IMG/VR virus record: IMGVR_UViG_3300047472_000309
Coordinates: 62,001-126,000 of that record
Length of the DNA stretch: 64,000 nucleotides
Direction: 5' to 3' (one strand)
Shown here one piece after another: positions 444-63,658 of this stretch. A program made the position numbers and the translations under genes. Numbering within the stretch: position 1 is the stretch's first letter; every line of letters starts with the position of its first letter. The notes beneath the pieces were generated by a model, which saw nothing but the letters and a program-made list of their open reading frames with translations, was not told where the DNA came from and ran no database searches.

Positions 444-481
444 CGGCATAGAGGCCAGGGGAAACCCTGGCCCTTATGACG
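444..481. terminator. Bidirectional CGGCATA-hairpin-TATGACG element
   Basis: cggcata ga ggccaggg gaaa ccctggcc ct tatgacg, between convergent genes. Confidence 0.75.
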
Positions 482-500
482 TTGAAATAGACGATGAAGC

Positions 501-2027
501 TTAGTCGAACGTAATGCTCTTAGCCACGTAGCCTTGGCCGGTATCCTTGTTCGTGTAGACCCCACCAATCTGCCAGTGACCGTCGGGCCAGATGTAGTAG
601 CCGTTCTGGTTCTTGACACCCGGATCGCTCAGGTCATAAGCCTGACCGGTATCCGGATTGATCGTCTTCGGGTCCGGAGCCGGGTTGACCGTTTGTCCCG
701 TATTGGGCGAAACATTCGAGTAGCCGGTCGGCACTGTGATCGGTTGAGCCCCCGAAGCCAGTGCCAAGGGGTCTTGTGTGGAGGCCGACTGACTGTTGCC
801 CTCAAACACCGTCATCGGAAACTGCGAGGCCAGTTTGTCCGCCACGGTGGATTGCTGCACCACCCCTGCCAAAGCCATCACGTTGTTGGTGCGATCCGTG
901 GTGCTCGTCACGCCCTGCTGAATCACCTTCTTAAAATCATCCGAGCCATTGGTGATCGCATTCAGATTAAATGCCGGATCGTTTTGTGTCACGTCATTAC
1001 CGTCGGCATCGGTAATGGTGGTTTCCCGATTCAGCGTGGCCCAGTCTGGATCAACGCTACTGTACGCACTGGTCAGATTGCTAAAACAGTCCGCATAATC
1101 CACCTGGTTCGTATTGGACGAGGGTGGCGGCAAATAGTACGACGAACTGAAGTCCGCCAGGATGTTCGGGTTATAGGCGTAGGCGCCACGCGCCCCCAGG
1201 CTCGCACCAATTGACATTAGGCTGTGCACATCACCACTGGCAATCACTGAAGGCAATACCCTGGCCGTAATCTGCGCGAGCATGCCGCGATCCGTAATGG
1301 CTGCTGTGAGCGAGCCGAACGAATTCGGAATCCCGTAGCCGCACGAGGTTTGAATCAGGCCCGCATACAGACCGACCTTCACCCCAACGTCGTTGATATT
1401 GAAGTTCGCACTGATACCCAGCGAGTTAATACATTCCCCGAGCGCCTGCATGCCGCCCGCGTACGCCTGGTCCACTTGCTGCATCACCCCGCCTAGCTCA
1501 GCGTAGATCTGACTACCTACCTGACCCACGGCCTGGCCTACTGCGCCCTCGGCTGCACCAATTCCGGCATTGATGGAACTGGCGATATTGTCTAGTCCTG
1601 CTAGACCGAGCGCATTGAGCGCCCCTTTGGTGACGAGCGACGCCCCGAGGATGCGCGCCATGATGTCACCCTTTTGCAGCATGGTGACACCGCGCTGAAT
1701 CTGACCCGCTACGCGCAAGCCAGCGCGCAAGCCTGCCATCACCGCCCCGGCTTCCTGGGCGATAAACTTCCCCCCGCGCAAGACGTCGGAGATGGAGAAG
1801 TCAAACTTCTGAAACAGATTCTGGACGTCCGTGATGATGGCATTGCCACCAGGGGGATTGTAGACGTCCGCGGTAGCCAGCGCGTTATCCGCTGAGCCGA
1901 CCCAGGCATTTTGCGCCAGCGCGGCTTGCTGCGCAGACATTGCACCATTGACACCCGTCAGTGCCGTGCTGGTGCTCGCGGCCACAGCGTTAGTAGCGCT
2001 CTGAACCGCATCGGTAATAGACGGCAT
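501..2027 (-). CDS. Probable virion structural protein, 508 aa
   Basis: Long ORF with A/S/T/N/G-rich structural composition; GAGG RBS upstream. Confidence 0.65.
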   Translation of the reverse strand: MPSITDAVQSATNAVAASTSTALTGVNGAMSAQQAALAQNAWVGSADNALATADVYNPPGGNAIITDVQNLFQKFDFSISDVLRGGKFIAQEAGAVMAGLRAGLRVAGQIQRGVTMLQKGDIMARILGASLVTKGALNALGLAGLDNIASSINAGIGAAEGAVGQAVGQVGSQIYAELGGVMQQVDQAYAGGMQALGECINSLGISANFNINDVGVKVGLYAGLIQTSCGYGIPNSFGSLTAAITDRGMLAQITARVLPSVIASGDVHSLMSIGASLGARGAYAYNPNILADFSSSYYLPPPSSNTNQVDYADCFSNLTSAYSSVDPDWATLNRETTITDADGNDVTQNDPAFNLNAITNGSDDFKKVIQQGVTSTTDRTNNVMALAGVVQQSTVADKLASQFPMTVFEGNSQSASTQDPLALASGAQPITVPTGYSNVSPNTGQTVNPAPDPKTINPDTGQAYDLSDPGVKNQNGYYIWPDGHWQIGGVYTNKDTGQGYVAKSITFD

Positions 2028-2057
2028 GGTGGTCCTCGAAACAAAAAAAGAAGAAGG

Positions 2058-2083
2058 GGCATAGGGGAGGCCGAAGCCTCCCC
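2058..2083 (-). terminator. Hairpin (TTCG loop) + TATGCCC + U-rich tail
   Basis: Minus strand reads ggggaggc ttcg gcctcccc tatgcccc ttcttctttttt. Confidence 0.75.
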
Positions 2084-2105
2084 GAGCGATACAACGCGAA
2101 CTGCG

Positions 2106-3919: not shown

Positions 3920-4031
3920 AACGCCCTCTTTGTAAATTCGCCTATTTACGGTGCCTTTTGACCGATACTATGACTCCAGCCCCCGTCAAGCATAGGGGCA
4001 TTGGATAAGGACACCTTGTTACTTATCTCCA

Positions 4032-4044
4032 ATTAGTAATATAT
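4032..4044 (-). promoter_or_regulatory. Putative early (virion RNAP) promoter, TATATTAC
   Basis: Minus strand ATATATTACTAAT contains the phiKZ early consensus TATATTAC, in an AT-rich intergenic region. Confidence 0.55.
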
Positions 4045-4069
4045 CGCTGAGTTTTTTAAGGATACGACC

Positions 4070-4516
4070 ATGTCTGCACATCAGGAAGTCGAAGTCGTGG
4101 GGCCCGCCGATGCGGATGAGGCCGTACTCGACTATACCCAAGGAATGCGGAAGCAGATTGTTGGCGTGCTCGCTAAGAATCTGGAAAACCTCGCCGACCC
4201 CAAAATCGTGGGCACCATCTCCCAAGTGCTCGACGGCATGGACCGACAGGCGCTCGGTAAGATGAAGCTGCGCGTCGAAGAAGCGCAGGTGATGAATCAA
4301 GAAGGCATGGCGGCCAACATCGCGGAGATCTTGCGCCAGATGGGCAGCGGCGGTCATAACTTCCAAGCCGCTGAACCTGTTCCAAGGGAGGTTCCGAAGC
4401 TCGGAAGCGATGTACCCGACCCCGTCCTGGTGGAAGGGGAAGTTGCCACTACGCCGATTCAGCAAGACTTCGATTCGTTCCACGCTCAGTTTGCACCGGT
4501 GGACGGTGCAGACTAA
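4070..4516 (+). CDS. Hypothetical protein, 148 aa
   Basis: ORF with AAGGA RBS, followed by a hairpin-TATGCCG element. Confidence 0.7.
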   Translation: MSAHQEVEVVGPADADEAVLDYTQGMRKQIVGVLAKNLENLADPKIVGTISQVLDGMDRQALGKMKLRVEEAQVMNQEGMAANIAEILRQMGSGGHNFQAAEPVPREVPKLGSDVPDPVLVEGEVATTPIQQDFDSFHAQFAPVDGAD

Positions 4517-4543
4517 CGGAAACCCGCTCCAAACCGTGACTGT

Positions 4544-4604
4544 GCTCCGCACCCACCTCGACCGCTCCAGAAGTGGGGTCGAGGGGTGCGGGGCGTTTAT
4601 GCCG
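4544..4604 (+). terminator. Long hairpin + TTTATGCCG element
   Basis: gctccgcacccacctcgacc...ggtcgaggggtgcggggc gtttatgccg. Confidence 0.65.
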
Positions 4605-6668: not shown

Positions 6669-7370
6669 TTAATTAAGACCAGTATTGGCGAGGTGCATGC
6701 AGGTCAGAATGATGCTGAGGGTCTGCGTGGACTTCACCTGGGTGCCCAGCTTCTCGATCGACTTGAGCGACACCCCGCCAGTTTTGCTGATAGCGGAATT
6801 GAGCGCATCAAAGCCTTTCTCATCCCCGCCTCGATACTTGAGCATCTCGGTGAGGTTGGCGTCCAGATTAAGTGCGGCCATAATCTGCGTCTCTGGGTAG
6901 GAGATCTTCGATCCCTTGGACTTCCCGGTCGGCTGGCCTGTGAAATCGTCCACGGACTTAGAGTCTTCAGGAATCGAGATCTTCTTGACCAGCAGCTGCG
7001 CTTGACGGCGCAGGGGGAGATCAACCACCAGGTACGGAATCGGTGACAGATACGGTGGAATATCGTTGCCATTGTCGATCCAGATCCTTTCAAAGAAGTT
7101 ATGGCCCAGTTCATCAGCCAGCTTCAGGTTCCGTTCGATGTCTAGGCGCACCAGCTTCTTATCGCCGCCTTGCGGGTGTTCTGCGAGGTTAGGCGCAATC
7201 ACCGCGAGTCGAATCTCCTGCCGCTCAAGCTTTTCCATCCATACGGCAAACGCCGCGTCGTCCATGCTGGCGAAGAGATTGCGGTAAATGTCAGTGTTAC
7301 CTGACTCCGGGATCAACTTCTCGATCCATTCGTAGATAACCGCTTCAGCAGCTGCTCGGTTTCCTGCCAT
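6669..7370 (-). CDS. Virion RNA polymerase beta-like subunit, C-terminal piece (phiKZ gp149-like)
   Basis: DDFTGQPTGKSKGSKISYPETQIMAAL..LTEMLKYRGGD aligns with the RpoB C-terminal TQQP.GGK...GEMEVWAL..LQEML..KSDD region. Confidence 0.85.
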   Translation of the reverse strand: MAGNRAAAEAVIYEWIEKLIPESGNTDIYRNLFASMDDAAFAVWMEKLERQEIRLAVIAPNLAEHPQGGDKKLVRLDIERNLKLADELGHNFFERIWIDNGNDIPPYLSPIPYLVVDLPLRRQAQLLVKKISIPEDSKSVDDFTGQPTGKSKGSKISYPETQIMAALNLDANLTEMLKYRGGDEKGFDALNSAISKTGGVSLKSIEKLGTQVKSTQTLSIILTCMHLANTGLN

Positions 7371-11089: not shown

Positions 11090-11146
11090 CGGCATAAACC
11101 CACTAACCCGCCCGTACCACTGGGGAGGTTAGTGGGAATATGACCG
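11090..11146. terminator. Bidirectional CGGCATA-hairpin-TATGACC element
   Basis: cggcataaa cccactaacc...ggttagtggg aa tatgaccg, between convergent genes. Confidence 0.7.
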
Positions 11147-13350: not shown

Positions 13351-13800
13351 ACGCTGTAATCCTTTCTTTTCTATTCGTACCGAATCAGAGTGTTTCGGGC
13401 TCGTCAGAGTATCCCTCAGGGGAATATATTGTTTCTTGCGTGTCCGAGACGCCCTCGCCTGATTCAGTAGGTAAGGTTGTCCATGGTGCAGGTCTAAGTA
13501 GTCCTGCTCGACCTCTTTCGTCACCTCGACTGGGAGGTTGATGTAGTAGAAATCAAAGGTTCGCTTACCTTCTTTAAACGCACGTTGCAAACCCTTGTTT
13601 TCGGCTACACCCCGTTTAAGTGCACGTAAGTGTTTAATCCGACCTCGGTACAAGTGCTTGGTTTGTCCGAAGAAGACTTCATCGGTCTGGGGGAAATGAA
13701 TCGCGTAGACGCCAGGCAAAGGAATGCGTTTGCGCAAATCCCCGTGGACATAAAGCGACAGATTGGTCTGAAGCCAATCTCGGATCGTAGATGGTGTCAT
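13351..13800 (-). CDS. GIY-YIG domain in frame with, and not separated by a stop from, the RNase H gene
   Basis: PGVYAIHF...VFFGQT..L.R...KHL..LKRG...N..LQ.AF...EVEQ.YLD....LLN. Confidence 0.65.
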
Positions 13801-13858
13801 GGAACTGCAGGGCAGGCATGTCGCAAAACATGAACCTACCCTGTCAAAATAACTTTTT

Positions 13859-17549: not shown

Positions 17550-17585
17550 CGGCATAGAGGGAGGCTTCGGCCTCCCCTTATGTCC
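17550..17585. terminator. Bidirectional CGGCATA-hairpin-TATGTCC element
   Basis: cggcataga gggaggc ttcg gcctccc ct tatgtcc. Confidence 0.75.
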
Positions 17586-22200: not shown

Positions 22201-22258
22201 CGGTCATAAACCCCCGTGCCTATCCTCTTCACAGGGGACGGGCCGGGGGTTTATGCCG
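22201..22258. terminator. Bidirectional CGGTCATA-hairpin-TATGCCG element
   Basis: cggtcataaacccccg...cgggggtttatgccg. Confidence 0.75.
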
Positions 22259-28047: not shown

Positions 28048-28106
28048 CGTCATAGAGGCCTTTCCCGCCCCTCGCAACCATGAGGGTAGGGAAAGGCCTT
28101 ATGCCG
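28048..28106. terminator. Bidirectional CGTCATA-hairpin-TATGCCG element
   Basis: cgtcatag aggcctttccc...gggaaaggcct tatgccg. Confidence 0.75.
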
Positions 28107-38270: not shown

Positions 38271-38310
38271 CGTCATAAGCCCCCAGGCTTTCGCCTGGGG
38301 GTCTATGCCG
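38271..38310. terminator. Bidirectional CGTCATA-hairpin-TATGCCG element
   Basis: cgtcataag cccccaggc tttc gcctggggg tc tatgccg. Confidence 0.8.
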
Positions 38311-42173: not shown

Positions 42174-42217
42174 GGCTCATAAGACGGAGGGGCCGAAGGC
42201 ACCCTCCATCTCATGCT
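42174..42217 (-). terminator. Variant hairpin + TATGAGC element
   Basis: ggagggtgccttcggcccctcc gtct tatgagc on the minus strand. Confidence 0.5.
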
Positions 42218-44234: not shown

Positions 44235-44235
44235 G

Positions 44236-44638: not shown

Positions 44639-44683
44639 GGGCATAAACCGAGACAAGGAAAAAAATCCTTGTCTCGTTATGAG
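44639..44683. terminator. GGGCATA-hairpin-TATGAG element
   Basis: gggcataaac cgagacaagga aaaaaa tccttgtctcg t tatgag. Confidence 0.65.
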
Positions 44684-44773
44684 TGAGCCTTAGGCCCTGT
44701 CACCGCTCGTGTTAGGAAACACGTCACGCTGCGCAATCATGGTCAGGGGTCCGTTTGGCCTGCTATCGATGAA

Positions 44774-44816
44774 CAAAAAAGAAAGGCCTGGGGATCACTC
44801 CCCAGGCGCTATGCCG
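44774..44816. terminator. Hairpin with a U-tract on the minus strand and TATGCCG on the plus strand
   Basis: aaaaaagaaag gcctgggga tcac tccccaggc gc tatgccg. Confidence 0.7.
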
Positions 44817-46952: not shown

Positions 46953-48653
46953 TTAGTGAGACGCACTGAATTGACGGACCCGACTACCGTAGGGTTTCAG
47001 CTTGACCTGGGTGGAGTCCAGCAACTCAATGAGAGCCGGGTCGCGCAGCACGACACCCTTGGAGTCCGTATGCAGATGCGGATTCAAGCGTGCATGCCCG
47101 GAAGGATCACTCTTGGGCAGATTCGCATACCCGCCGACTTCACACACCGAAATGTGGATCTTCTTCGTCGGGTCACTGATTGCCGCGTTGTCCTTCCGCC
47201 CCGTTTGGCGACTGGAGCTCGTTTGCGGCACCAACTGGGCGGTCGTTTTGAACGCCTTGTTGTCGCCAGGACACGAAATCGTCGAGACCTCACCGTGCTT
47301 CTTGGTGATCGAGTACACCAGACCGGTCCGCAGCGTCTGGTTCATCATGGTCGTGATTTCTTTCGTGTTCAGTTCTTTCTTCGAAGCCGCCTTCAGCTTG
47401 AAGTAGAACTTGTTGATTTGCTTGGTGATTTCGTCGAGCACGTAATACAGCACCGACAATTCCTTGTCGTACATGCTACTGACGTGATCCCGCGCCGCGA
47501 GAATCCAGTCCTGGAAGTTCTCGAGCACAATACCGAAGAGCTGGTAAATGTCCTCGATCGGCATCCCGATGTCGCGGAACTTGATCTTCATCACCTCATC
47601 GATGTACTCATCCAGGCTACGGATGTGCTCAGCGATGTCGTCCTCCAGCTTACCTTCGGTGATGTTGCTGGAGAACAGCAGATGACCCATCAGAATCATC
47701 CACAAGGCACGCTCCCGAGGCTTGGGTGCATCGATCGTGCCCAGATACTTCGGCTGGACGCGGCTCGGGAAGTGATCGACGATGTAGAAGAACCCACACA
47801 CCAGGTTTTTGACCATCGGCGTGTAATCCTCCCGGCGGATAGCCAGGCGTATCGTCGTCGGCGTATACTGCTTAAGCGTATACGTGCGCGCAGGCCGCGT
47901 GTGGGTGTTGGTCTTCACGATCACCCAGTCGCTTGGCGGATACTCCGCTTCGCTAATGGTGCTCGCATCCCCCACGATCGGCACGGTGCCGCCGAAGCGC
48001 TGGAACATTTCCGCAAATCCATACTTACACAGCAAGTAGTGAACGAGCGTGGTGTTCGCTTTGATGACCGGCTTAAGCTTTTGCATCTTCTGGTTCTTGT
48101 TGTACACCAAGGACCAGGCCACGTGAACTGTCTCACGGAAATCCCGCCCCGTGACATCGTTCGCGAGATAATGCTGCTGCTCGCGCTGGAACGTCAGCTT
48201 CGCGCGGATGAGCTTCACGAAGATGGAATCCTCCCCCTTCGAGATTACTCGGTCGGCCAAAATCGGCGAGATCACAAAGCGTGAGCCGCCGAGATAAATC
48301 ACCCCAGCATCGGACACAAACGGGAGATACATGTACCGCTTGATTTCCTCCGTCTTACCGTTCTTGTCGGTATGGCGAAAGATGTACTTCATCATGTAAA
48401 TGTCCGACCTGGCCACATCGAACATCCGTTTGTTGTTCTTCTTCCGAGTTGCCTCGTCGAATTCCTCTTGTGGGGTACAGCGCTCTCCTCTCACATAGGT
48501 GAAGCCATCCGGAAAGCCTTTAGCCACGGCTCGGAATACCGAGTCAACCCAGCCTTCAGCTTCCTGCATGTGCTTCTGTGCCAAGCCGCCCGCCAAATCC
48601 GGATTCAATTTGGGGGTGTGTTGATCAATTAGCCGAGAAAGTTCGCGGTCCAT
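46953..48653 (-). CDS. Non-virion RNA polymerase beta-like subunit, N-terminal piece (phiKZ gp123-like)
   Basis: YLPFV..AG.IYLGGSRFVISPIL.D matches the RpoB N-terminal region; C-terminal IHIS..EVG....PKSDPSG..RLNP. Confidence 0.85.
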   Translation of the reverse strand: MDRELSRLIDQHTPKLNPDLAGGLAQKHMQEAEGWVDSVFRAVAKGFPDGFTYVRGERCTPQEEFDEATRKKNNKRMFDVARSDIYMMKYIFRHTDKNGKTEEIKRYMYLPFVSDAGVIYLGGSRFVISPILADRVISKGEDSIFVKLIRAKLTFQREQQHYLANDVTGRDFRETVHVAWSLVYNKNQKMQKLKPVIKANTTLVHYLLCKYGFAEMFQRFGGTVPIVGDASTISEAEYPPSDWVIVKTNTHTRPARTYTLKQYTPTTIRLAIRREDYTPMVKNLVCGFFYIVDHFPSRVQPKYLGTIDAPKPRERALWMILMGHLLFSSNITEGKLEDDIAEHIRSLDEYIDEVMKIKFRDIGMPIEDIYQLFGIVLENFQDWILAARDHVSSMYDKELSVLYYVLDEITKQINKFYFKLKAASKKELNTKEITTMMNQTLRTGLVYSITKKHGEVSTISCPGDNKAFKTTAQLVPQTSSSRQTGRKDNAAISDPTKKIHISVCEVGGYANLPKSDPSGHARLNPHLHTDSKGVVLRDPALIELLDSTQVKLKPYGSRVRQFSASH

Positions 48654-49958: not shown

Positions 49959-49971
49959 TTTAGTAATATGT
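49959..49971 (-). promoter_or_regulatory. Putative early promoter, CATATTAC
   Basis: Minus strand ACATATTACTAAA matches the 4032-4044 motif; lies upstream of the nvRNAP-subunit operon. Confidence 0.5.
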
Positions 49972-49992
49972 AATTGAAAGAATCTTGAGCAG

Positions 49993-50331
49993 CGGCATAA
50001 TAGCCGAGGCTTGCGCCTCGGCGTCTATGACGGCATAAAACACCCAGCGAGGGTAGCTGGTTAGGCTACCCCCACCTTCGGAGACATCAAGGAGTTCCGT
50101 TGCCAGTTCCCCTCAATAGATATCCTAACGCAGTAAGGAATTACGGCCAGCAGTTTTGACGCCATCGACTCACCTTCTGAAGGGCAGGCAAGAACGGCAT
50201 AAAGCCCAAGGTTTCCCTCGGGCCTCATGTTTGCAAACGGTGCTGCCCATGTTCCCATGGGTGTTGTGCCTGGCCATGTAACCATAGACAGCATAAATAG
50301 ACCTCGCCCAGGACTCCCTGGGCGAGACCTA
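49993..50331 (-). terminator. Four tandem hairpin-TATGC(C/T)G elements downstream of the major capsid gene
   Basis: cggcata at 49993, 50031 and 50195 and cagcata at 50289, each adjacent to a GC-rich hairpin. Confidence 0.7.
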
Positions 50332-50425
50332 CACAGCCCCAACAGCTGCACCGACGCATGGCTCAAGGCTAACCTGAGTAGATCTGAAATCCACCCAGGT
50401 CAGTTACATCAACCAAGCGTGTTCT

Positions 50426-52630
50426 TCACGACACCGTGTGCATGTTGACCGCAACCTTCGCCGTCACCACGTCTTCGATGCCGCTCACGTCGATCGAACC
50501 CATGATCGGCAGGTTCACGACGTGCAGGAACGACGGCTGGACCGTGATTTCCTTGCTGTTCGCGCCGTTGCGGTGCAGCGGGAGAATCAGCGTCAGTTCC
50601 GGCTTCCATGCCATGTTGCCGAAGTGCATCGGGTTCGGCACGCCTTCCTTGCCTTCACCGAATTCGCCGAACGACATGCGGATCTTGCCGCGCATGTTGA
50701 TGTTCAGCGTCGACACGATCTTCACGTTGAAGTCGTTGCCGAGCGTACGGAAGTCGCCCGTGACTTGCAGGTAACGCGCGATGACCGGGTCCGTACCGAT
50801 GATGACGGTCGGCGTAGCAGCGATGCCGCCAGCCAGTGCGTCTGCAGCAGCCTTGTAGCCCGAGTCGCGGTACATGCGGTAAGCCATGTCGCGCAGGATG
50901 TTGATCAGCGAGGCCTGGATGTCGGCCGCACGCTCGTGCGACTTGATCGAGTCCACCACCGCCGGTGCGTTGTAGTCTTGGTGCTCGTAGAACGGAGTCA
51001 CCAGGAAACGCGCCACGCCGAGGATTTCCGGATCGCCTTGATACAGACCACCGTTGGCCGTGACCAGTTCCTTCAGCGCCGTTTCGACGTCCAGCAGCTT
51101 CGCCACTGCAGCGTTCGACGTACGGATGTGCGTTGCCGTGATCAGTGCAGCCAGATCGCTTGCGTCGTTCTGGTCACCCAGCGTCAGCGGACGCGGAATC
51201 GTGATCGGCGACAGCAGCGGCACGCCGTAAACCATGTTGTAGAACGTGAGGTCGAGCAGCTGACCGCGTTCACGACGGTTCGTGTTGGTGCGACGTGCGT
51301 CGAGGTCGTAACCGACGATCGATGCGCCAGCCAGCGCCGTAGCGATGGTTGCGCCTGCGCCCGTGGTCGGGTCGACGATGTTGCCGTCTTCGTCACGGAT
51401 TTCGTAGATCGACACTTGACCAGCCGACAGTTGCGTGTCAGCGAGTTCGAGGTTCACGTTGCCGAACACTTGCACCGACAGCTTGACTTCGTAGTTGCCT
51501 TGCACGATCGGCGCGAGCACCGTCGAAGCCGAGCCGTCGGCCTTCTTCGTGTTCACGTTCAGCACGAGCGCGTTGCTGATGAAGTTCAGCGTCATCAGAC
51601 GGTAGTTGTTCTGCACCGAGTACGTGAACGTGCCCGATTGCATGTTGGCAACCGACTTGAACTTGATGACTTCGGCCGAGCCGCCCGAGCCGACTTGCAG
51701 GTACAGCGAGCTCAGCTTGATCGCCGGGTCGATTGCGTCGGTCGAATCCAGCATGCCGGTTTCGAGCAGCGCGTCGGTTTGCGAGATGCCGAGCAGCGAG
51801 AACGACTTGCCGATCGCGAGCGGCGCCGTCTTGATCGACACGCCTTCGTGTTCGATGTCCGCAGCCGGAACCAGGCCGGTCGCGACGAAATTCGCTGCGC
51901 TTTCCGGACGGTAGACCGGGACGATCTTCGAGAGGTCGTTGCGCAGGATGGTCGGGTCGATCAGGGCCTGGATGATGTTCTTCTTGCCGAAGTTCTTGCT
52001 CAACGCGCCGTCGATGGTGCGACGAACTTCGTCGTACACTTGCACGAGGCGAATCGACACGGTGTAGCCGTACTGGTCCGGCGTGACGACGACGGTCGGG
52101 AAGAATGCTTCGCCGAATTCGTCTTGACGTGCTGCTTGCAGGTTGTACGCCACCGAGTACACGGTAGCCGACTTCGTTTCACGCTCGTCGTAGGCTTCGA
52201 GCGCCTTCGACTGACGGTGATCCATCGCGCCGTTGCCCATCGCGGGGATGAACGTGTGGCCTTCGAGCGAAACCTTGCGTGCGACCGGTGCCTTCAGGAA
52301 GCCAGCCATGTCGCCCGCGACGATTGCCGCGACCAGACCTGCTTGCTTTTGCGCGACGGTGTGCTTGCCCTTGATCAGGCCGTCGTTCGCGTTCAGTTCA
52401 GCCGCGAATTGCGAGCTGATCGATTCGAGCGACGTCTTCAGACCCTTCACCGAGCCTTCGAGTTCGAGCTGCGTGGTTGCGTCGAGCGATTCCATCGCGA
52501 CGACGGACGATGCCAGGCGCTTTTCGATGTGCGGGCCGCTGCGGTTGACAGCATGTTGGACCTTCGCAACCAGCGAGTTGATCGTGCCGTCCTGGCCAGC
52601 GTTGCCGATTTGATACAGTTTGGAAGACAT
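50426..52630 (-). CDS. Major capsid protein (phiKZ gp120-like)
   Basis: 734 aa; propeptide with AME/SLE/SLE/ALE sites; YN..AARQDEFGEAFFPTVV; extreme codon bias. Confidence 0.9.
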   Translation of the reverse strand: MSSKLYQIGNAGQDGTINSLVAKVQHAVNRSGPHIEKRLASSVVAMESLDATTQLELEGSVKGLKTSLESISSQFAAELNANDGLIKGKHTVAQKQAGLVAAIVAGDMAGFLKAPVARKVSLEGHTFIPAMGNGAMDHRQSKALEAYDERETKSATVYSVAYNLQAARQDEFGEAFFPTVVVTPDQYGYTVSIRLVQVYDEVRRTIDGALSKNFGKKNIIQALIDPTILRNDLSKIVPVYRPESAANFVATGLVPAADIEHEGVSIKTAPLAIGKSFSLLGISQTDALLETGMLDSTDAIDPAIKLSSLYLQVGSGGSAEVIKFKSVANMQSGTFTYSVQNNYRLMTLNFISNALVLNVNTKKADGSASTVLAPIVQGNYEVKLSVQVFGNVNLELADTQLSAGQVSIYEIRDEDGNIVDPTTGAGATIATALAGASIVGYDLDARRTNTNRRERGQLLDLTFYNMVYGVPLLSPITIPRPLTLGDQNDASDLAALITATHIRTSNAAVAKLLDVETALKELVTANGGLYQGDPEILGVARFLVTPFYEHQDYNAPAVVDSIKSHERAADIQASLINILRDMAYRMYRDSGYKAAADALAGGIAATPTVIIGTDPVIARYLQVTGDFRTLGNDFNVKIVSTLNINMRGKIRMSFGEFGEGKEGVPNPMHFGNMAWKPELTLILPLHRNGANSKEITVQPSFLHVVNLPIMGSIDVSGIEDVVTAKVAVNMHTVS

Positions 52631-52679
52631 CTTTTGTTTCCCTTGAGTTAAACGAAGTTGCTATTGGGGCTGAAACCGT

Positions 52680-53249
52680 TTAGGCCGCCACTGCTACTTT
52701 TTTCTTGGACAGCAGTTGCAGCCAACGCTTGAACCAAGGTGTTCGAGCCACCTCGTTAGGCGGTGTGTACACATACAATGCTTTTAGAATTGCTTCCACC
52801 GTAGCGAGGTAGAGCTCATCGGGAGCACTGGCAGTATAGAAGCCCGGACTAATGACCATCGCGCCAACGGCAGGAGCTATGTCATAGTAATTAAAAGGTT
52901 CACTGTGACGCTCGGTGCGACTGTCTTCGCCAAACAAGCGATCTTTCGCGTCCTTGACGAACGACTCATCGCAGGTTAGCGGGATGACCGTGTTCTGGTA
53001 AAAGGTTCGGCTCTCCTCCGTACGAAGTGATTCATACCACGCCTGGTGGATTCCCCAGGTCCCAATGTGAAGATCACCACCCACAAGATGGGTAGCAAAT
53101 TCTTGCACAATCAGGAGGCCAGCCATATCAGCAGGCGCACAAACACGACGGATCTTCTCGAAATCGAGCATGTCCGCCAAATTCATCTTGTTACGATGAA
53201 TGGAATCGGCGATCCAGTAAGGGACCACCACAATCTTTTTTTCGGCCAC
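52680..53249 (-). CDS. Hypothetical protein upstream of the capsid gene
   Basis: GTG at 53249 with GGGAG RBS. Confidence 0.65.
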   Translation of the reverse strand: MAEKKIVVVPYWIADSIHRNKMNLADMLDFEKIRRVCAPADMAGLLIVQEFATHLVGGDLHIGTWGIHQAWYESLRTEESRTFYQNTVIPLTCDESFVKDAKDRLFGEDSRTERHSEPFNYYDIAPAVGAMVISPGFYTASAPDELYLATVEAILKALYVYTPPNEVARTPWFKRWLQLLSKKKVAVAA

Positions 53250-55049: not shown

Positions 55050-55106
55050 GCTAGGTGTGACACTTGGGCCTGACCAGCCCAGGTGTTGCCCTAGCCTTTT
55101 ATGCCG
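55050..55106 (+). terminator. Hairpin + TTTTATGCCG element
   Basis: gctagg..acacttgggc..gcccaggtgt..cctagc ctt ttatgccg. Confidence 0.7.
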
Positions 55107-57297: not shown

Positions 57298-59427
57298 ATG
57301 AAACGACGCATGAGCCTGGAGAGCATTGCTGCTCTGGGTATGGAATCCTTCGACTCGTCCCCCACAGGCAATGTTCAGCCGACGATGCAGGGCGAAACCC
57401 CGGAGCAGCCCCTCATCACCGCAGGCTACAACGAATCACCCTTCAGTGGTTCGGAGAACTATGCAGCGGAGAAGCTGGCCCAGCGAGTCAAGGAAGCCAT
57501 CGAGAAGCCGCTCTTTCCGGTGCGCTACGCTTCGGAAGCTGACGCCATCGTGGTGGACGACGATGAATTCGACGCGCTGATTCGTTCCTCGACAGCTGCC
57601 ACGTCGGTCTGGGACGACGACAGCCAGGTCTCGCTTGAAGCCAAGGACAGCAACAAGCTGGCGGTCGCCAAGAACAAGCTGCACGGGCGCTTTAAGAAGA
57701 TGTTTGAGGGCTGGAAAGATGGCTGGCGCACCATGCCCGGTCTCATCAAGAAGTACGAGGCACGGCTCGCCGAGCTGCAGAAGGAACTCAACGGCACGAT
57801 CATCCGCGGCCCGCTCGATGTGAATCTCTCGGGCCTGTGGCAGCACTTCTCCAACGACGCCGGTCCGATCCACAACAACTTCATGCACAAGGTGCAGGAG
57901 GACTTGGCGTTCTCGAGCTATATCCTCGGCGACTTCTCCAAGGAAGCGATGGCTCAGCTGCGTAAGCTGGAGATGGCCCTGCACACGGGTCAAGGCAACT
58001 CCGACGAAGAAGCCAAGCGCACAGCACTGGATCTCGAGAAGCTCGAAGCCCCCTCGATGTACCTGGACCACAAGTGGATGTGTGTCTCGGGTGAGCAACC
58101 GTATCTGTCGGTCACGGGTATCTACGCCAACCAAGGGCGTGTGCCGCGTCCCGTGGCGATTGGTGGCATGTCGATGGAGAAGCTCGCCAAGATGGCGATG
58201 CCGTTCCATGTACGCGAGTACGGCTCATTCCTGCACGGCATGAAGAAGCTCTTCGTGAACGGTAGCAAGGCGAACGTGCGTTTGACTGAGAACGATCTGG
58301 AGAACCTGCTCAAGGCCGGTCAGACGTACCTGGAAGGTGCGCGCAGCTACATGGATAACTACCATAACAGCTGGCCGATCTTCCGGCGTATTGACGAGTC
58401 GCTTGAGCTGATCTGGAAGGACTTCGATCTGACGGACTACTCGATCACGCTGGGCGATGAAGAGGACGAAGACGCCGTGGAAATCAGCTGGCAGACGTCG
58501 GGTACCGGTGACGTGACACGCCGCGCTGCCCTCTACGACCAGATCCTGATGGTGGTGCAGAACTTCGCCGACTCAGTGGTCGCACCGGGTAGCCACGAAG
58601 CGCATCGCGCGGTGCGGGCAGCGAAGTTCCACTGCTACTTGCTCGAGGCTGCGCTGAAGGCCGCGAAGTCAGCGGCGATGGAAAGCGAGAGTCTTGCGAT
58701 GGAAGCACGCGGCTTTAAGGGTCTGCAATTGGCTCAGGAGTTCTTCTGGAACAATAAGCCTCACAAGCCTGAGGAATACGTGGCGCCTAAGTGGAAGGAC
58801 ATCCCGAAGCCGCAATGGGACCCGAAGCACCCGCCCTCAATCGCTGAATCGGTGAAGGCCCTGCGTGCTGCTATGCAAGAGCACGATCCCGAAGCTCTCA
58901 AGACGTTTAATCGTCCGGCGACTCCTCAGGAGCTGCAAAAGCTCGAAGCCCTGGTCAAGCAACACACCGGCAAAGGTTTGCCCCCGCAATTGGTCGAGCT
59001 GTACAAGATCTCCAATGGCGGTGTGGATAGCTACCGCCACCTGCGTCTGTTTGACTTCGATGATTTCATGCCGATTCAGCAGGTCATCCAAACCTACGAG
59101 TTGTTCTTGCACTTGACCGAGAATGACTGGGCGGGTGACGAGTCGGAGATTGAAACCGGTATGCAAGGCAAGCGGTATTGGGAACCATGGTGGATTCCCT
59201 TCACCGCCAGCGGTAGTGGCGACCATTTCTGCGCGGATGTGAATCCGGGTGGCGGTGGGCAAACTGGTCAGGTGATCGACTGGTGTCATGATTACCACGC
59301 TCGTCGGGTGGCTGCCCCGAGTATTGCAGCATTCTTGGCGATGTCGATTCATCGTCAGTTATACCTGATCCAACACAAGAAGGATTGGGACGCCAAGAAC
59401 GGTGGCGGGCAAGCAGCACAGAAGTAA
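57298..59427 (+). CDS. Internal head protein fused to a C-terminal SMI1/KNR4 (SUKH) domain
   Basis: SLE, GME, SLE, AME, AME sites; C-terminal PAT.QEL.KLE...LP..L.ELY..SNG...WIPF..SGSGD.FC.D..PG..GQ.GQVI.W.HD......APS...FL. Confidence 0.8.
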   Translation: MKRRMSLESIAALGMESFDSSPTGNVQPTMQGETPEQPLITAGYNESPFSGSENYAAEKLAQRVKEAIEKPLFPVRYASEADAIVVDDDEFDALIRSSTAATSVWDDDSQVSLEAKDSNKLAVAKNKLHGRFKKMFEGWKDGWRTMPGLIKKYEARLAELQKELNGTIIRGPLDVNLSGLWQHFSNDAGPIHNNFMHKVQEDLAFSSYILGDFSKEAMAQLRKLEMALHTGQGNSDEEAKRTALDLEKLEAPSMYLDHKWMCVSGEQPYLSVTGIYANQGRVPRPVAIGGMSMEKLAKMAMPFHVREYGSFLHGMKKLFVNGSKANVRLTENDLENLLKAGQTYLEGARSYMDNYHNSWPIFRRIDESLELIWKDFDLTDYSITLGDEEDEDAVEISWQTSGTGDVTRRAALYDQILMVVQNFADSVVAPGSHEAHRAVRAAKFHCYLLEAALKAAKSAAMESESLAMEARGFKGLQLAQEFFWNNKPHKPEEYVAPKWKDIPKPQWDPKHPPSIAESVKALRAAMQEHDPEALKTFNRPATPQELQKLEALVKQHTGKGLPPQLVELYKISNGGVDSYRHLRLFDFDDFMPIQQVIQTYELFLHLTENDWAGDESEIETGMQGKRYWEPWWIPFTASGSGDHFCADVNPGGGGQTGQVIDWCHDYHARRVAAPSIAAFLAMSIHRQLYLIQHKKDWDAKNGGGQAAQK

Positions 59428-59441: not shown

Positions 59442-59480
59442 GAGGGAGCGGCTCGAGAGGGCCTGCTCCCTCTTATGCCG
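59442..59480 (+). terminator. Hairpin + TTATGCCG element
   Basis: gagggagcggc..gcctgctccctc t tatgccg. Confidence 0.75.
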
Positions 59481-61009: not shown

Positions 61010-61030
61010 TCCTTTTCACATTGGACCAAC

Positions 61031-62266
61031 ATGAAATCCTTTAACATGCGCGCCGCGCTCGAAGCGCGCCCGATTGAAGACCAAGATCTGGAAGACACCG
61101 CCAAGCCTGCGCCGGACGCAGGTCAGATCGATGGCGACACCACGACGCTCTCCGGCATGGCCAAGCCCGGTCAGAATCCGGTGCCCGATACGGAAAACGT
61201 CGCTACTGAAGGCACTGAGAAGATCGATACGCGTCCGGTGGATCTGGACGATGTCGTCTTGCTCGAGCAAGATCGCCGCGCCTTTGAGCCGCAGTCGGAA
61301 GGCAGTGCTGAGCACGATGCGATCAACGCGCAGAACATCGCCCAGGAAGGCTGGATCAGCAAGAAGTTCGAGAATGTCAAGGACTTCTTCATGCATCGTG
61401 AGAAGGAACTCGAAGATGGCCACACAGCCACCAAAGAGAACCTGGAAGCGATTGCGCGCCTGCGCACCAAGTTGCAAGTACGCGCGGGTGAAGTCACCCG
61501 CGATGCGGACACCGTCACGATCAGCAAGTACGCCAAGTGGCTCTCGATCGACGGCAAACACATCACCGATCCCGCGCGACTGATTCGTGAACTGCAACGC
61601 GTCTACGAGCTCGTGCAATGGTCGGGCAATCTGGATAAAGCCTGGCTCGAGGGCTACAAGTTCGTGGCGGACCAGATCTGGAAGCTCGGCGAGACGGACC
61701 TGAAGAAGGCCAACGAGAATCTGAAGAAGATGTGGGAAGTCACGCGGCCGCAAGGCGCCGAGAAGTGGCTCACGGTTAACAAGCCGGTCCAGTTCAAGGG
61801 CAAGGAATACATCGACAAGCATTCGCCGTTCTTCCTCGGTCAGTGGTGCGTCTTTGAGATCTCCCAAGAAGAAGACAACCATGCACCGGGCGGGATTGTT
61901 GAAATCCAGCGCATGAAGTCGATGAAGGCTGTCGGCGGGGGTGAATTCCCGGCGTTGACCAAGGCCCAGATGAAGCAAGTGCTCGACATCTGTGAAAAGA
62001 TCGAAGCGCATCTGGTGTCCATGACCTTCGATGGCCGCATCATCGATCGTTATCTGGACGCGCTGGATGAATTCGCGTATCGCTATCGCAACTTCAAGTC
62101 GCTGTCGCGCGAAGACCAGACACTCGCTTCGCGTCTGTATGCCTGGGGCCAGCTCATCATGCAGCACGACACGACTTTCCTGCCGACGGCTTTTAGCAAC
62201 CACCTGGTGAAGGTGATGTTGAGCTACGTCGAGAAGTCGATGCGTCGCATTGAAGTCGATCAGTAA
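61031..62266 (+). CDS. Internal head protein
   Basis: Acidic propeptide with ALE, ATE and AQE-G sites, followed by the amphipathic helix GWISKKFENVKDFF. Confidence 0.7.
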   Translation: MKSFNMRAALEARPIEDQDLEDTAKPAPDAGQIDGDTTTLSGMAKPGQNPVPDTENVATEGTEKIDTRPVDLDDVVLLEQDRRAFEPQSEGSAEHDAINAQNIAQEGWISKKFENVKDFFMHREKELEDGHTATKENLEAIARLRTKLQVRAGEVTRDADTVTISKYAKWLSIDGKHITDPARLIRELQRVYELVQWSGNLDKAWLEGYKFVADQIWKLGETDLKKANENLKKMWEVTRPQGAEKWLTVNKPVQFKGKEYIDKHSPFFLGQWCVFEISQEEDNHAPGGIVEIQRMKSMKAVGGGEFPALTKAQMKQVLDICEKIEAHLVSMTFDGRIIDRYLDALDEFAYRYRNFKSLSREDQTLASRLYAWGQLIMQHDTTFLPTAFSNHLVKVMLSYVEKSMRRIEVDQ

Positions 62267-62278
62267 AAGGAGTCCCTC

Positions 62279-63601
62279 GTGGAAGAAGTCAATCAAGAAG
62301 CGACGATCGTCACCCTGAGTGATGACGTCGAATGCAATCGCCTGAACGATGCGCTCGATAAGCTGGGCGAGTTGGGTACGCGACTGCAAGCAGACGGTCA
62401 ACTGACAGTCGACGTGGCGCTCGAACATCAGGCCCTCACCGGTAGCAATACCCTGGTGAATACCTACTACAGCACGCTCGGCAAGCAACAGAAGCTCAAA
62501 GTGGCTCAGGAAGGCCTCTACGAGCAAGCCAAGAGCCTGCTGAAGAAGGCGATGGACCTGCTGTGGGAAATGATCGTCAAGGTCTGGAAGTGGCTGCAAA
62601 AGCTCTTTGTGAATGGCGTGCCCATGACCGAAGCAGCCCTCGCCCGCGAGAACGAGAAGTTTAAGTCCTTCGTGATGCCGGTGCAAAAAGCCGAACGGGT
62701 TCCGAGTTCACGCACTGCCATCATCCAGGCTGTCCGGGAAGAAGGCCTGAACGAAGCGTTCGTGAGCAAGCTCACTCCGGAAGAGATGGACATCTACAAC
62801 GAGGGTCCGTACCATCAGGCAGTGCAGCGCATGATTCCGGCGCTGGATGGCTTCAATGTGGCGAGTGTCGTCGAGACGCTGGTGAAGTGGCACGAGAAAT
62901 GGTTGCCTGCCGGTCGCCAGTTTGATCAGGACAACGCAGGGGCTGATCCCCATGCGCTTCAGGACAAGCTGGAACGCTTCCAGAAGGACGCTCAGACCGA
63001 TCTGGAGCACGCGACCTCCATGGCTACCAAGCTCATGCAGATCCGCCTGGAGAGCTACCAGACGGCTGTGGAAGCCCGTCGAAAACTGAAGGTCGATCCG
63101 AACTTCCATCTCGGTACCGATCTCTCGGGCATCATGGCGCGTGGTGTGCGCATCTACGACCAGTCGGGCTACAAGAAGATGGGTTCGGCCCTGACCGATG
63201 TCTTCAAGTCCCTCGACTCAACGGTCAAGAAGATGGAGTCGATTCGCACCAAGGCCTACCAGAATCCGATGCCCAACGACCATGGCGGGGCCAAAGCGGG
63301 CGAGGAGTGGATCGAGCAGATCTACATGAAGGAAGTCAATCGGATCATTTCGACGCTGCATCAGTGCGTCTCGATGATTCAGTTGATCAACAACTACTAC
63401 TCGTTCGTGGTTGGCTCGGGCAAAACCATCATGAAGTACGTGATGACGGTGGCGCAGAAGGCCATTCAGCACGGTGGTGATGCTGCCTCGCTGCAAGAAA
63501 TCGTGCGTAGCGGTAGTTCGGCACTGATGGGCATGGCTGCAGATGGTTCGCAAATGGCAGCGCAGCAACAAGCTGCCGGTATGCAAACCGACATGGGTTA
63601 A
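62279..63601 (+). CDS. Internal head protein
   Basis: GTG start with AGGAG RBS; ALE and AQE-G sites, followed by an amphipathic helix (KKAMDLLWEMIVKVWKWLQKLF). Confidence 0.7.
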   Translation: MEEVNQEATIVTLSDDVECNRLNDALDKLGELGTRLQADGQLTVDVALEHQALTGSNTLVNTYYSTLGKQQKLKVAQEGLYEQAKSLLKKAMDLLWEMIVKVWKWLQKLFVNGVPMTEAALARENEKFKSFVMPVQKAERVPSSRTAIIQAVREEGLNEAFVSKLTPEEMDIYNEGPYHQAVQRMIPALDGFNVASVVETLVKWHEKWLPAGRQFDQDNAGADPHALQDKLERFQKDAQTDLEHATSMATKLMQIRLESYQTAVEARRKLKVDPNFHLGTDLSGIMARGVRIYDQSGYKKMGSALTDVFKSLDSTVKKMESIRTKAYQNPMPNDHGGAKAGEEWIEQIYMKEVNRIISTLHQCVSMIQLINNYYSFVVGSGKTIMKYVMTVAQKAIQHGGDAASLQEIVRSGSSALMGMAADGSQMAAQQQAAGMQTDMG

Positions 63602-63619
63602 GCGTAAACGACGCTAGAA

Positions 63620-63658
63620 CGGCATACGAGGCCAGGGTTTCCCCTGGCCTCTATGACG
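63620..63658. terminator. Bidirectional CGGCATA-hairpin-TATGACG element
   Basis: cggcatacga ggccaggg tttc ccctggcc tc tatgacg. Confidence 0.78.

What the first reader, a model, noticed from the sequence alone, without database searches (positions are those of the whole stretch)
444..63658. Window-wide hairpin + TATG(C/A)CG element: a probable phage-RNAP-specific terminator or processing signal
Seen: about 18 intergenic GC-rich hairpins of unrelated stem sequence are followed within a few nt by TATGCCG, TATGACG or a close variant, mostly without a U-tract. Positions: 444, 2058, 4544, 11090, 17550, 22201, 28048, 38271, 42174, 44639, 44786, 49993, 50031, 50195, 50289, 55050, 59442, 63620. At seven convergent gene junctions the motif is on both sides (CGGCATA...TATGCCG). 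At co-directional junctions (2058, 55050, 59442, behind the capsid gene) it is generally only on the side downstream of transcription. Exceptions are 4544 (convergent but one-sided) and 44786. Inference: this polarity argues for a sequence-specific signal read by the phage multisubunit RNAPs or by an RNA-binding/processing factor, rather than simple stem extension. TATG is also the phiKZ late-promoter core, so a dual stop/restart role is possible.
Basis: partly seen in the sequence, partly recalled or inferred. Interest (0 to 1): 0.72.

Follow-up and report, generated by a model that had tools for sequence, protein, structure and literature searches.

The report
phiKZ-type hairpin plus TATGCCG terminators
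The window comes from a phiKZ-like giant phage whose gene ends carry a GC-rich hairpin followed by the fixed word TATGCCG(T) instead of a run of U, the same motif already mapped as a transcript 3' end signal in phages phiKZ and 201phi2-1.

Summary
All 18 listed sites exist. In the whole 310-kb genome, TATG is the commonest 4-mer right after strong intergenic hairpins: 105 boxes on 81 hairpins.

The polarity also holds.
- Co-directional junctions, one-sided: 41 sense, 10 antisense (p=1.5e-5).
- Convergent junctions: 15 of 17 two-sided.
- The box is not a stem extension and not a U-tract.

It is not new in kind. ONT-cappable-seq mapped 61 phiKZ transcript ends to hairpin+YTTATKYYGT (PMC10914365), and 201phi2-1 has the same motif. 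TTATGCCGT fits that consensus.

What this window adds:
- The box is kept in relatives with 33-57% GC, while the stems change by compensatory substitutions.
- It occurs in at least six phages from several hosts and is absent from the Goslar and SPN3US pieces I examined.
- Two-sided sites never carry TATGCCG on both sides.
- TATG and CATA are among the most depleted 4-mers inside genes.

Best reading: phiKZ-type terminators in which a sequence-specific box replaces the U-tract. It may be read through the nvRNAP pocket that binds non-template TATG at promoters.

No RNA ends could be mapped here. Phage-RNAP specificity and a stop/restart role remain untested.

The parts
444..481 (.). Two-sided terminator at a convergent junction. 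Hairpin 452-473. Box TATGCCG on - (444-450) and TATGACG on + (475-481).
   Evidence: The FLC9 orthologue has a different stem and keeps the boxes.
2057..2083 (-). One-sided terminator at a co-directional (- -) junction. Hairpin 2064-2083, box TATGCCC 2057-2063. The next start codon is 36 nt downstream.
4543..4604 (+). One-sided terminator at a convergent junction. Long hairpin about 4543-4594, box TATGCCG 4598-4604 after spacer GTT. No box on the - side.
11090..11145 (.). Two-sided terminator at a convergent junction. Hairpin 11099-11136. TATGCCG on - (11090-11096), TATGACC on + (11139-11145).
   Evidence: FLC9 orthologue.
17550..17585 (.). Two-sided terminator at a convergent junction. Hairpin 17558-17577. 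TATGCCG on - (17550-17556), TATGTCC on + (17579-17585).
22202..22258 (.). Two-sided terminator at a convergent junction. Hairpin 22210-22250. TATGACC on - (22202-22208), TATGCCG on + (22252-22258).
28048..28106 (.). Two-sided terminator at a convergent junction. Hairpin 28057-28098. TATGACG on - (28048-28054), TATGCCG on + (28100-28106).
38271..38310 (.). Two-sided terminator at a convergent junction. Hairpin 38279-38302. TATGACG on - (followed by a T run), TATGCCG on + (38304-38310).
42175..42215 (-). Weak variant at a co-directional junction. Hairpin 42182-42211, box TATGAGC 42175-42181. The next start codon is 27 nt downstream.
44639..44684 (-). Hairpin 44649-44676 with the sense box TATGCCC (44639-44645, - strand) and a weak antisense TATGAGT on +.
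44770..44816 (.). Hairpin 44786-44807 has an ordinary T run on the sense (-) side and TATGCCG (44810-44816) on the antisense (+) side.
   Evidence: The FLC9 orthologue has T run + TATGCCC on the sense side.
49993..50032 (.). Fourth of four tandem terminators behind the major head gene. Hairpin 50003-50022. Sense box TATGCCG on - (49993-49999), antisense TATGACG on + (50026-50032).
50031..50085 (-). Third tandem terminator behind the head gene. Hairpin about 50041-50085, box TATGCCG 50031-50037.
   Evidence: (9 of 14 pairs with compensatory changes in 6 relatives)
50195..50225 (-). Second tandem terminator behind the head gene. Hairpin 50202-50225, box TATGCCG 50195-50201.
50289..50335 (-). First terminator behind the head gene. 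Hairpin 50299-50330, box TATGCTG 50289-50295.
   Evidence: (10 of 11 pairs compensatory in 11 relatives; TATGC and the following T invariant)
55050..55106 (+). One-sided terminator at a co-directional (+ +) junction. Hairpin about 55050-55095, box TATGCCG 55100-55106.
   Evidence: FLC9 orthologue L004 6079.
59442..59480 (+). One-sided terminator at a co-directional (+ +) junction. Hairpin 59442-59472, box TATGCCG 59474-59480.
   Evidence: FLC9 orthologue L004 12420.
63620..63658 (.). Two-sided terminator at a convergent junction. Hairpin 63628-63651. TATGCCG on - (63620-63626), TATGACG on + (63652-63658).
46953..48653 (-). Homologue of phiKZ GP123, the beta-like subunit of the non-virion RNA polymerase that binds non-template TATG in phiKZ. 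It is the candidate reader of the box.
   Evidence: tblastn gives 29% identity, E 2e-79. 8 of 14 pocket residues are identical and 2 conservative, from a weak alignment. The pocket is described in PMC12809450.
6669..7370 (-). Homologue of phiKZ gp149, a virion RNA polymerase subunit. It shows that the phage carries the second phage polymerase set.
   Evidence: tblastn gives 41% identity, E 2e-46.

Best explanation
**What they are.** These are the transcription terminators of a phiKZ-like (Chimalliviridae) giant phage. They belong to the type already mapped in phiKZ and 201phi2-1. Each consists of a GC-rich RNA hairpin of arbitrary sequence, then 0-3 mostly T/C bases, then the conserved box TATG-C-C-G-T.

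**What they do.** A transcript coming from the upstream gene ends at or just after the box. At convergent junctions one hairpin serves both directions, with a box on each side. Four such units stand in tandem behind the highly expressed major head gene.

**Status of that part.** Their role as 3' end signals is inferred, from identity of the motif with experimentally mapped phiKZ sites and from position and polarity here.

**Proposed mechanism (inference, about 0.3).** The box replaces the U-tract as the element that stops the polymerase. The phage non-virion RNA polymerase binds single-stranded non-template TATG in a pocket of its beta-like subunit at promoters. The same contact, met during elongation just after a hairpin has formed, would pause the enzyme and let the hairpin release the transcript. 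The CCGT extension and the need to keep the box out of the RNA helix would tune this step.
For: **Same motif as mapped terminators.**
- The phiKZ consensus is BCCYCCCCHWWDGGGRRGGBYTTATKYYGT at 61 ONT-cappable-seq 3' ends (PMC10914365).
- Motif A of 201phi2-1 (n=59) resembles it (PMC11512511).
- I read it directly in phiKZ DNA: GGGAGGGC followed by ttatgtcgt or ttatgctgt.

**The phage is phiKZ-like.**
- It has a phrog_3231 major head protein.
- Pfam RNA polymerase beta and beta' fragments are present.
- It has homologues of phiKZ gp149, gp178, gp180 and gp123.

**Enrichment.** TATG is the top 4-mer after strong hairpins.

**Position and polarity.**
- The distance from stop codon to TATG is mostly 26-60 nt.
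- One-sided co-directional sites run 41 sense to 10 antisense, p=1.5e-5.
- 15 of 17 convergent hairpins are two-sided.

**Conservation.**
- 21 of the 27 window boxes have a listed FLC9 counterpart, with different stems.
- In 16 IMG/VR relatives (capsid identity 48-100%, GC 33-56%) a hairpin of unrelated sequence plus TATGC[CT][GC]T follows the head gene.
- Compensatory changes occur in 9 of 14 and 10 of 11 stem pairs, while TATGC and the following T are invariant.

**Not a U-tract.**

**Not a stem extension.**

**TATG is under selection genome-wide.**
- In coding sequence, TATG stands at 0.49 and CATA at 0.45 of the codon-shuffle expectation. They rank 4th and 2nd most depleted of 256 words, comparable with GAGG at 0.47.
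- Sense-strand TATGCCG occurs 3 times against 17 expected.

**Basis for the pocket idea.**
- GP123 binds non-template T-3 A-2 T-1 G+1 (PMC12809450).
- The window homologue keeps 8 of 14 contact residues plus 2 conservative ones.
Against: - No RNA 3' ends are available for this phage or a close relative. The two RNA runs found hold only about 92%-identical contigs from inside the capsid gene.
- In the phiKZ structure the TATG pocket is described as incomplete in the transcribing complex.
- If the enzyme paused with G at +1, the RNA end would lie only about 5-6 nt after the stem, shorter than in classical intrinsic termination.
- Strong 201phi2-1 terminators with these motifs also reduced read-through in uninfected host cells, so the host polymerase can respond to at least the AT-rich versions.
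- 10 one-sided boxes face the wrong way.
- About 25 ordinary hairpin+T-run terminators coexist in the genome, with no regional separation from the TATG class.
- Goslar and SPN3US also have these polymerases but showed no box in the 42-kb pieces I examined.
Confidence: 0.75

Rival explanations
1. Ordinary intrinsic terminators. The hairpin does the work with any RNA polymerase, and the box is only a short, degenerate U-tract (UUAU) inherited from an AT-rich ancestor, with no specific reader.
For: - The phiKZ and 201phi2-1 sites were classed as intrinsic by ARNold.
- Variants such as TTTATTTCGT occur in phiKZ and in this genome.
- 201phi2-1 terminators work in uninfected host cells.
- LucasX annotates such sites as Rho-independent terminators.
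Against: - G at position 4 and C, C/T, G/C, T after it are kept in genomes from 33% to 57% GC, while everything around them changes.
- The longest T run after the stem is 1-2 in 67 of 82 sites.
- Symmetric boxes are avoided at two-sided sites.
- TATGCCG is depleted on the sense strand of genes.
Confidence: 0.2
2. RNA processing or RNA-binding signal. Transcripts read through and are then cut at the single-stranded box, or are bound there by a phage protein. The hairpin protects the new 3' end.
For: - ONT-cappable-seq 3' ends do not separate termination from processing (method as described).
- The box seems to be kept out of the RNA helix, as expected for a single-stranded RNA recognition site.
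- The window encodes a phiKZ gp155-like ribonuclease.
Against: - No candidate nuclease is linked to the motif.
- Strong depletion of both TATG and CATA inside genes fits a DNA/transcription signal that works on either strand better than an RNA cut site.
- The published sites show a read drop across the site and were interpreted as terminators.
Confidence: 0.15
3. Stop/restart module. At co-directional junctions the TATG of the box is also a late-type promoter core (start at the G), so that the polymerase terminates and transcription of the next gene restarts at the same word.
For: - phiKZ late promoters are T-3 A-2 T-1 G+1, and TATG is necessary for initiation (PMC4666361).
- 15 co-directional boxes lie 24-45 nt before the next ATG, with only a ribosome-binding site between them.
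- Hairpin-less intergenic TATG points toward gene starts 119 times against 44 toward stops.
- TATG and CATA are depleted in genes.
Against: - 32 boxes sit at convergent junctions, where restart would only make antisense RNA.
- The bona fide phiKZ promoter p119L has no upstream hairpin and no CCGT after TATG.
- Late promoters show no conservation downstream of TATG.
- In long intergenic regions the boxes are not nearer the next start than the previous stop: 8 against 11.
- Read-through could equally serve the downstream genes.
Confidence: 0.25
4. DNA-level repeat. This would be a REP/MITE-like mobile palindrome or a protein-binding, replication or packaging site unrelated to transcription.
For: - It is a dispersed intergenic palindromic element.
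- In phiKZ the stems themselves are alike.
Against: - Stems in this phage are unrelated in sequence.
- The sites are orthologous and positionally fixed behind genes in FLC9 and other relatives.
- Polarity follows the direction of transcription.
- No Rfam family matches.
Confidence: 0.03

Closest known systems
phiKZ terminator motif (Putzeys et al. 2024, Microlife, PMC10914365): 5'-BCCYCCCCHWWDGGGRRGGBYTTATKYYGT-3', at 61 mapped 3' ends
   Same: - A GC-rich stem-loop followed by (Y)T-TAT-K-YY-G-T. TTATGCCGT is one instance of TTATKYYGT.
- Both sit behind genes and are bidirectional between convergent genes.
- The phage has the same two polymerase sets.
   Different: - In phiKZ the stem itself is conserved (GCCCTCCC/GGGAGGGC), and the box is AT-shifted: TATG[T/C][C/T]GT or TTATTTCGT, so it passes for a U-tract.
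- Here the stems are all different and the box is TATGCCG, with no U-tract.
- No 3' ends have been mapped for this phage.
201phi2-1 terminator motif A (PMC11512511), n=59
   Same: - The authors describe it as strongly resembling the phiKZ motif.
- Tandem terminators occur near the major capsid gene.
   Different: - The logo could not be read (figures and supplements are not held), so identity of the box rests on the authors' statement.
- Some of these terminators were shown to work in uninfected host cells, which has not been tested for the GC-rich version.
Classical intrinsic (Rho-independent) terminators
   Same: - A GC-rich hairpin directly behind the gene.
- The two-sided arrangement at convergent genes parallels A-tract/hairpin/U-tract bidirectional terminators.
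   Different: - There is no U-tract.
- A conserved G/C-containing word takes its place.
- The two flanks of two-sided sites avoid being complementary, whereas the A- and U-tracts of classical bidirectional terminators pair.
phiKZ late promoter core TATG (PMC4666361), read by the GP123 beta-lobe pocket (PMC12809450)
   Same: - The same four bases on the non-template strand.
- This phage has a GP123 homologue in the window.
   Different: - Promoters have no upstream hairpin and no conserved bases after TATG.
- The boxes here have both, and half of them face no downstream gene.
Sequence-specific stop or pause signals of other polymerases: the T7 RNA polymerase class II signal (ATCTGTT) and sigma70-dependent pausing at -10-like elements (from my own knowledge, not tested here)
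   Same: - A short DNA word, not a weak RNA:DNA hybrid, halts the enzyme.
- In the sigma70 case, a promoter-recognition contact is re-used during elongation.
   Different: - The enzymes are unrelated or only distantly related.
- The T7 class II signal needs no hairpin.
- This is only a functional analogy.

Membership tests
phiKZ-type terminator (hairpin + YTTATKYYGT) | GC-rich stem-loop immediately upstream of the box | tested here: met
   Hairpins of -12 to -32 kcal/mol end 0-4 nt before TATG at 105 boxes genome-wide, 27 of them in the listed window elements.
phiKZ-type terminator (hairpin + YTTATKYYGT) | Downstream box matching (Y)TTATKYYGT | tested here: met
   The consensus is TATG[C/A]C[G/C][T/C], preceded mostly by T or C. 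90 of 105 boxes match TATG[ACT][CT][GC]. I read the same box in phiKZ DNA.
phiKZ-type terminator (hairpin + YTTATKYYGT) | Located behind genes in sense orientation, and bidirectional between convergent genes | tested here: met
   One-sided co-directional sites run 41 sense to 10 antisense. 15 of 17 convergent hairpins are two-sided. The stop-to-box distance is mostly 26-60 nt.
phiKZ-type terminator (hairpin + YTTATKYYGT) | Transcript 3' ends accumulate at the site, with a drop in coverage across it | not testable with these tools
   Only two RNA runs hold related sequence. Their contigs are about 92% identical, lie inside the capsid gene, and none reaches the 3' region.
phiKZ-type terminator (hairpin + YTTATKYYGT) | The genome encodes the phiKZ-type virion and non-virion multisubunit RNA polymerases | tested here: met
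   Pfam beta and beta' fragments are present. Homologues of gp149, gp178, gp180 and gp123 were found.
Classical intrinsic terminator | U-tract directly after the hairpin | tested here: not met
   The longest T run is 1-2 in 67 of 82 sites. A consensus scan finds no excess of hairpin+T-run sites: 16 against 17.2 +/- 4.0.
phiKZ-type late promoter | TATG with transcription starting at G, upstream of a gene on the same strand | tested here: inconclusive
   TATG is present. Co-directional boxes are 24-45 nt from the next ATG in 15 cases, but 32 boxes face a convergent gene. 5' ends could not be mapped.
REP/MITE-like repeated palindrome | Copies share the stem sequence and are scattered without regard to orthology | tested here: not met
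   Stems are unrelated. Sites are orthologous in FLC9 and the IMG/VR relatives.

The most novel reading that the evidence does not exclude
One four-base word, TATG on the non-template strand, would be both the start and the stop signal of the phage non-virion RNA polymerase, read by the same beta-lobe pocket. Alone, it anchors initiation. Met during elongation just after an RNA hairpin, and extended by CCGT, it halts the enzyme and ends the transcript with no U-tract.

This would explain three findings:
- the word is purged from both strands of genes;
- the box is conserved across phages of 33-57% GC;
- two-sided sites avoid symmetric boxes.
Probability: 0.3. Interest if true: 0.75.

Novelty: new member of a known kind. 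Interest (0 to 1): 0.48.

Why it matters
**The open question.** phiKZ-like phages transcribe their genomes with two unusual multisubunit RNA polymerases. How these enzymes start is now known structurally. How they stop is not.

**Why this phage helps.**
- In AT-rich phiKZ the box after the terminator hairpin can pass for a U-tract.
- In this 56% GC phage it cannot.
- This makes the case that the box is a specific signal.
- It also gives a clean set of natural templates (FLC9 is cultured) for testing termination by these polymerases.

**Practical uses.**
- The box is an annotation mark for operon ends in uncultured giant phages of this group.
- It is a source of compact terminators for engineering them.

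Tried and rejected
**RNA evidence.**
- One search of sequencing runs of any kind found only DNA metagenomes.
- An RNA search found two runs whose contigs are about 92%-identical relatives and lie only inside the capsid gene.
- They gave no ends and nothing in the 3' region.

**Nearest sequenced genomes.**
- Megablast of the window against phage genomes found no match.

**Literature gaps.**
- Supplementary tables of the phiKZ and 201phi2-1 papers, which hold the exact 3' end positions, are not held.
- The position of the RNA end relative to the box is therefore unknown.
- The 2014 phiKZ promoter paper is not held.
- A full-text search for TATGCCGT found no description of the box, only a PCR primer.

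**Computations that gave little or failed.**
- A first genome-wide constrained folding timed out. I repeated it on intergenic DNA only.
- I asked whether boxes in long intergenic regions sit nearer the previous stop or the next start. The result was uninformative, 11 against 8, and my gene calls there are crude.
- I asked whether TATG-type and T-run terminators occupy different genome regions, as early and late classes might. They do not.
- GP123 pocket residues compared with presence of the box across phages were only suggestive. The alignments are at 22-30% identity.
- Rfam and tRNA scans of the window found nothing.

**Explanations considered and rejected.**
- Stem extension.
- A REP-like repeat.
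- The ATG of the box as a start codon: there is no ribosome-binding site, and the box sits 24 nt or more before the real starts.

Full report
**What the window is**

The window is bases 62,001-126,000 of a 310,654-bp virus record with direct terminal repeats. It has 56% GC and is held almost word for word by rhizosphere metagenome runs.

It is a phiKZ-like giant phage:
- The major head protein matches phrog_3231 and lies at window 50426-52630(-).
- Pfam finds RNA polymerase beta and beta' fragments in the genome.
- tblastn finds homologues of phiKZ virion-polymerase subunits gp149 (window 6669-7370), gp178 and gp180. It also finds the non-virion beta-like subunit gp123 (window 46953-48653).

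The nearest cultured relative is Burkholderia phage FLC9. Its head protein is 88% identical and its gene order is collinear with the window.

Yes.
- TATGMCG occurs 25 times in the window against 11.5 +/- 2.9 in shuffles.
- Each listed coordinate holds a GC-rich hairpin followed by a TATG box.
- Some coordinates are hairpin starts, and several boxes are variants. Details are in the observation check.

To avoid looking only where the motif was expected, I folded all intergenic DNA of the whole genome. I then asked which 4-mers lie 0-3 nt after hairpins of -12 kcal/mol or better.
- TATG is first of 256, with 93. Next come its own shifts TTAT (63) and ATGC (62), then TTTT (54).
- There are 105 boxes on 81 hairpins.
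- The consensus is TATG-[C/A]-C-[G/C]-[T/C]-[T/C].

T runs are absent.
- In the first 8 nt after the stem, the longest T run is 1-2 in 67 of 82 sense sites.
- A standard hairpin+T-run scan of 20 kb of the window finds no more sites than in shuffles.
- About 25 ordinary T-run terminators exist elsewhere in the genome, mixed among the TATG type.

**Polarity**

I made crude but orientation-safe gene calls.
- At co-directional junctions, one-sided boxes lie on the sense side 41 times and on the antisense side 10 times (binomial p=1.5e-5). Nine hairpins are two-sided.
- At convergent junctions, 15 hairpins are two-sided and 2 one-sided.
- The distance from stop codon to box is mostly 26-60 nt.

Its FLC9 orthologue has T-run+TATGCCC on the sense side.

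**Not a stem extension**

- At one-sided sites the mirror upstream flank pairs with the box at only 1-2 of 7 positions, which is what chance gives.
- None of the 24 two-sided hairpins has TATGCCG on both sides.
- Position 5 is the same letter in only 4 of 24, against 45% expected (p=0.006). The usual pair is TATGCCG with TATGAC(G/C).
- A at position 5 is mostly a feature of two-sided sites: 17 of 45 against 6 of 45 (p=0.015).
- The same asymmetry holds in FLC9, phiKZ and the IMG/VR relatives, at 17 of 18 two-sided sites.

So the RNA helix is interrupted at the box. I cannot explain why symmetry is avoided.

**Conservation**

- FLC9 shows hairpin+TATG boxes at the junctions orthologous to the window, with different stems. 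21 of the 27 window boxes have a listed counterpart.
- Sixteen IMG/VR relatives have head-protein identity of 48-100% and GC of 33-56%. Each has, behind the head gene, a hairpin of unrelated sequence followed by (T)TTATGCCGT, TATGCTGT or TATGCCCT. This includes the 33-38% GC genomes.
- Consensus folding of two orthologous hairpins gives compensatory changes in 9 of 14 and 10 of 11 pairs. TATGC and the following T are invariant (alignment).

In pieces of 23-50 kb from other phages:
- The box is strongly enriched after hairpins in phiKZ, Phabio, Xanthomonas phage LucasX and Erwinia phage Ea35-70.
- It is weak in SURPRISE13 and OBP.
- It is absent in Goslar and SPN3US.

**What is already known**

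- Putzeys et al. (PMC10914365) mapped phiKZ transcript 3' ends by ONT-cappable-seq. They found 61 terminators sharing BCCYCCCCHWWDGGGRRGGBYTTATKYYGT, described as a stem-loop followed by a TTAT region.
- The 201phi2-1 study found a motif (n=59) that 'strongly resembles' it. It also showed that eight strong terminators work in uninfected host cells.
- TTATGCCGT is an instance of TTATKYYGT, and I read the same box in phiKZ DNA.

The element is therefore a member of a published kind.

In AT-rich phiKZ the box (TTATGTCGT, TTATTTCGT) can pass for a U-tract, and the sites were classed as intrinsic terminators. In this 56% GC phage it cannot.

**Link to the promoter word**

- phiKZ late promoters are T-3 A-2 T-1 G+1, and TATG is necessary for initiation by the non-virion polymerase (PMC4666361).
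- The window encodes the GP123 homologue. 8 of 14 contact residues are identical and 2 conservative, but the alignment is weak.

In this genome:
- TATG and CATA are the 4th and 2nd most depleted 4-mers in coding sequence relative to codon-shuffled genes, at 0.49 and 0.45. The ribosome-binding word GAGG stands at 0.47.
- Other TA-containing words sit at about 0.6-0.66, so part of the depletion is general.
- Sense-strand TATGCCG occurs 3 times against 17 expected.
- Hairpin-less intergenic TATG points toward gene starts 119 times and toward stops 44 times. Some of these may be mis-called start codons.

These results suggest that TATG is read by the phage transcription machinery on either strand.

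**Most likely mechanism**

- The elements are terminators of the phiKZ type (confidence about 0.75 that sense-strand transcripts end there).
- The step I infer but cannot show is that the box is a specific halt signal replacing the U-tract. It may be read through the TATG pocket during elongation (about 0.3).
- Points against this step:
  - The pocket is reported as incomplete in the transcribing complex.
  - The geometry would put the RNA end unusually close to the stem.
  - The host polymerase responds to the 201phi2-1 versions.
- Rivals are a plain intrinsic mechanism, RNA processing or protein binding at a single-stranded box, and a stop/restart module.
- Restart is attractive for 15 co-directional boxes that lie 24-45 nt before the next ATG. 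It cannot apply at convergent junctions, and the real promoter p119L has neither the hairpin nor the CCGT.

**Verdict**

- The kind is already known, and this is a new, unusually clear member.
- The cross-clade invariance of TATGCCGT, the asymmetry rule and the depletion of TATG/CATA are additions I did not find in the searched literature.
- They turn termination by these polymerases into a directly testable question.

Noticed in passing
window 49956-49995 (- strand) and 4029-4070 (- strand); elsewhere in the genome at G000 5128, 19080, 44334, 134724, 174199, 282123 and 306310, among others: A second conserved intergenic motif occurs in about 17 copies, nearly all on the - strand. Its consensus is roughly GATTCAAAGATTTGTTAGACC-TATATTAC, which looks like an early-type (AT-rich) phage promoter. 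Several copies start 10-30 nt after a TATG-box terminator, for example behind the four terminators after the head gene.
   Followed up: partly
window about 50085-50190 (- strand), between the second and third hairpins behind the head gene: A non-coding block (ATCTATTGAGG.GAAC.GGCAACGGAACT...) is conserved in FLC9 and the IMG/VR relatives, although the surrounding intergenic DNA has diverged. It could be a small RNA bounded by terminators, as reported for phiKZ untranslated regions.
   Followed up: no
genome-wide; in the window at 444/475, 11090/11139, 17550/17579, 22202/22252, 28048/28100, 38271/38304 and 63620/63652: Two-sided terminators never carry the same box on both strands. One side is TATGC.., the other TATG(A/T).. 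The same rule holds in FLC9, phiKZ and the metagenomic relatives (17 of 18). The cause is unknown.
   Followed up: yes
window 57298-59427 (+): This 709-aa ORF has no PHROG family. In the phage collection it matches only FLC9 (46.6% identity), although its neighbours are well conserved. It is a fast-evolving protein in an otherwise conserved block.
   Followed up: no
window 50500-52921: Root and soil RNA libraries (runs X20, X21) hold contigs 88-99% identical to the head gene, so relatives of this phage may be transcribed in root and soil samples. DNA carry-over was not excluded.
   Followed up: partly
G000 23749-24798 (outside the window): A 1,050-bp stretch with no called gene contains three hairpin+TATG boxes, two T-run hairpins and an early-promoter-like motif. 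It probably holds unannotated small genes or non-coding RNAs.
   Followed up: no
window 18688-21174 (+) and 11713-13995 (-): These encode an SbcC-like palindrome-nuclease subunit (phrog_77) and a phiKZ gp155-like ribonuclease (phrog_3265/RNase H). They are of interest in a genome full of hairpin-forming palindromes.
   Followed up: no
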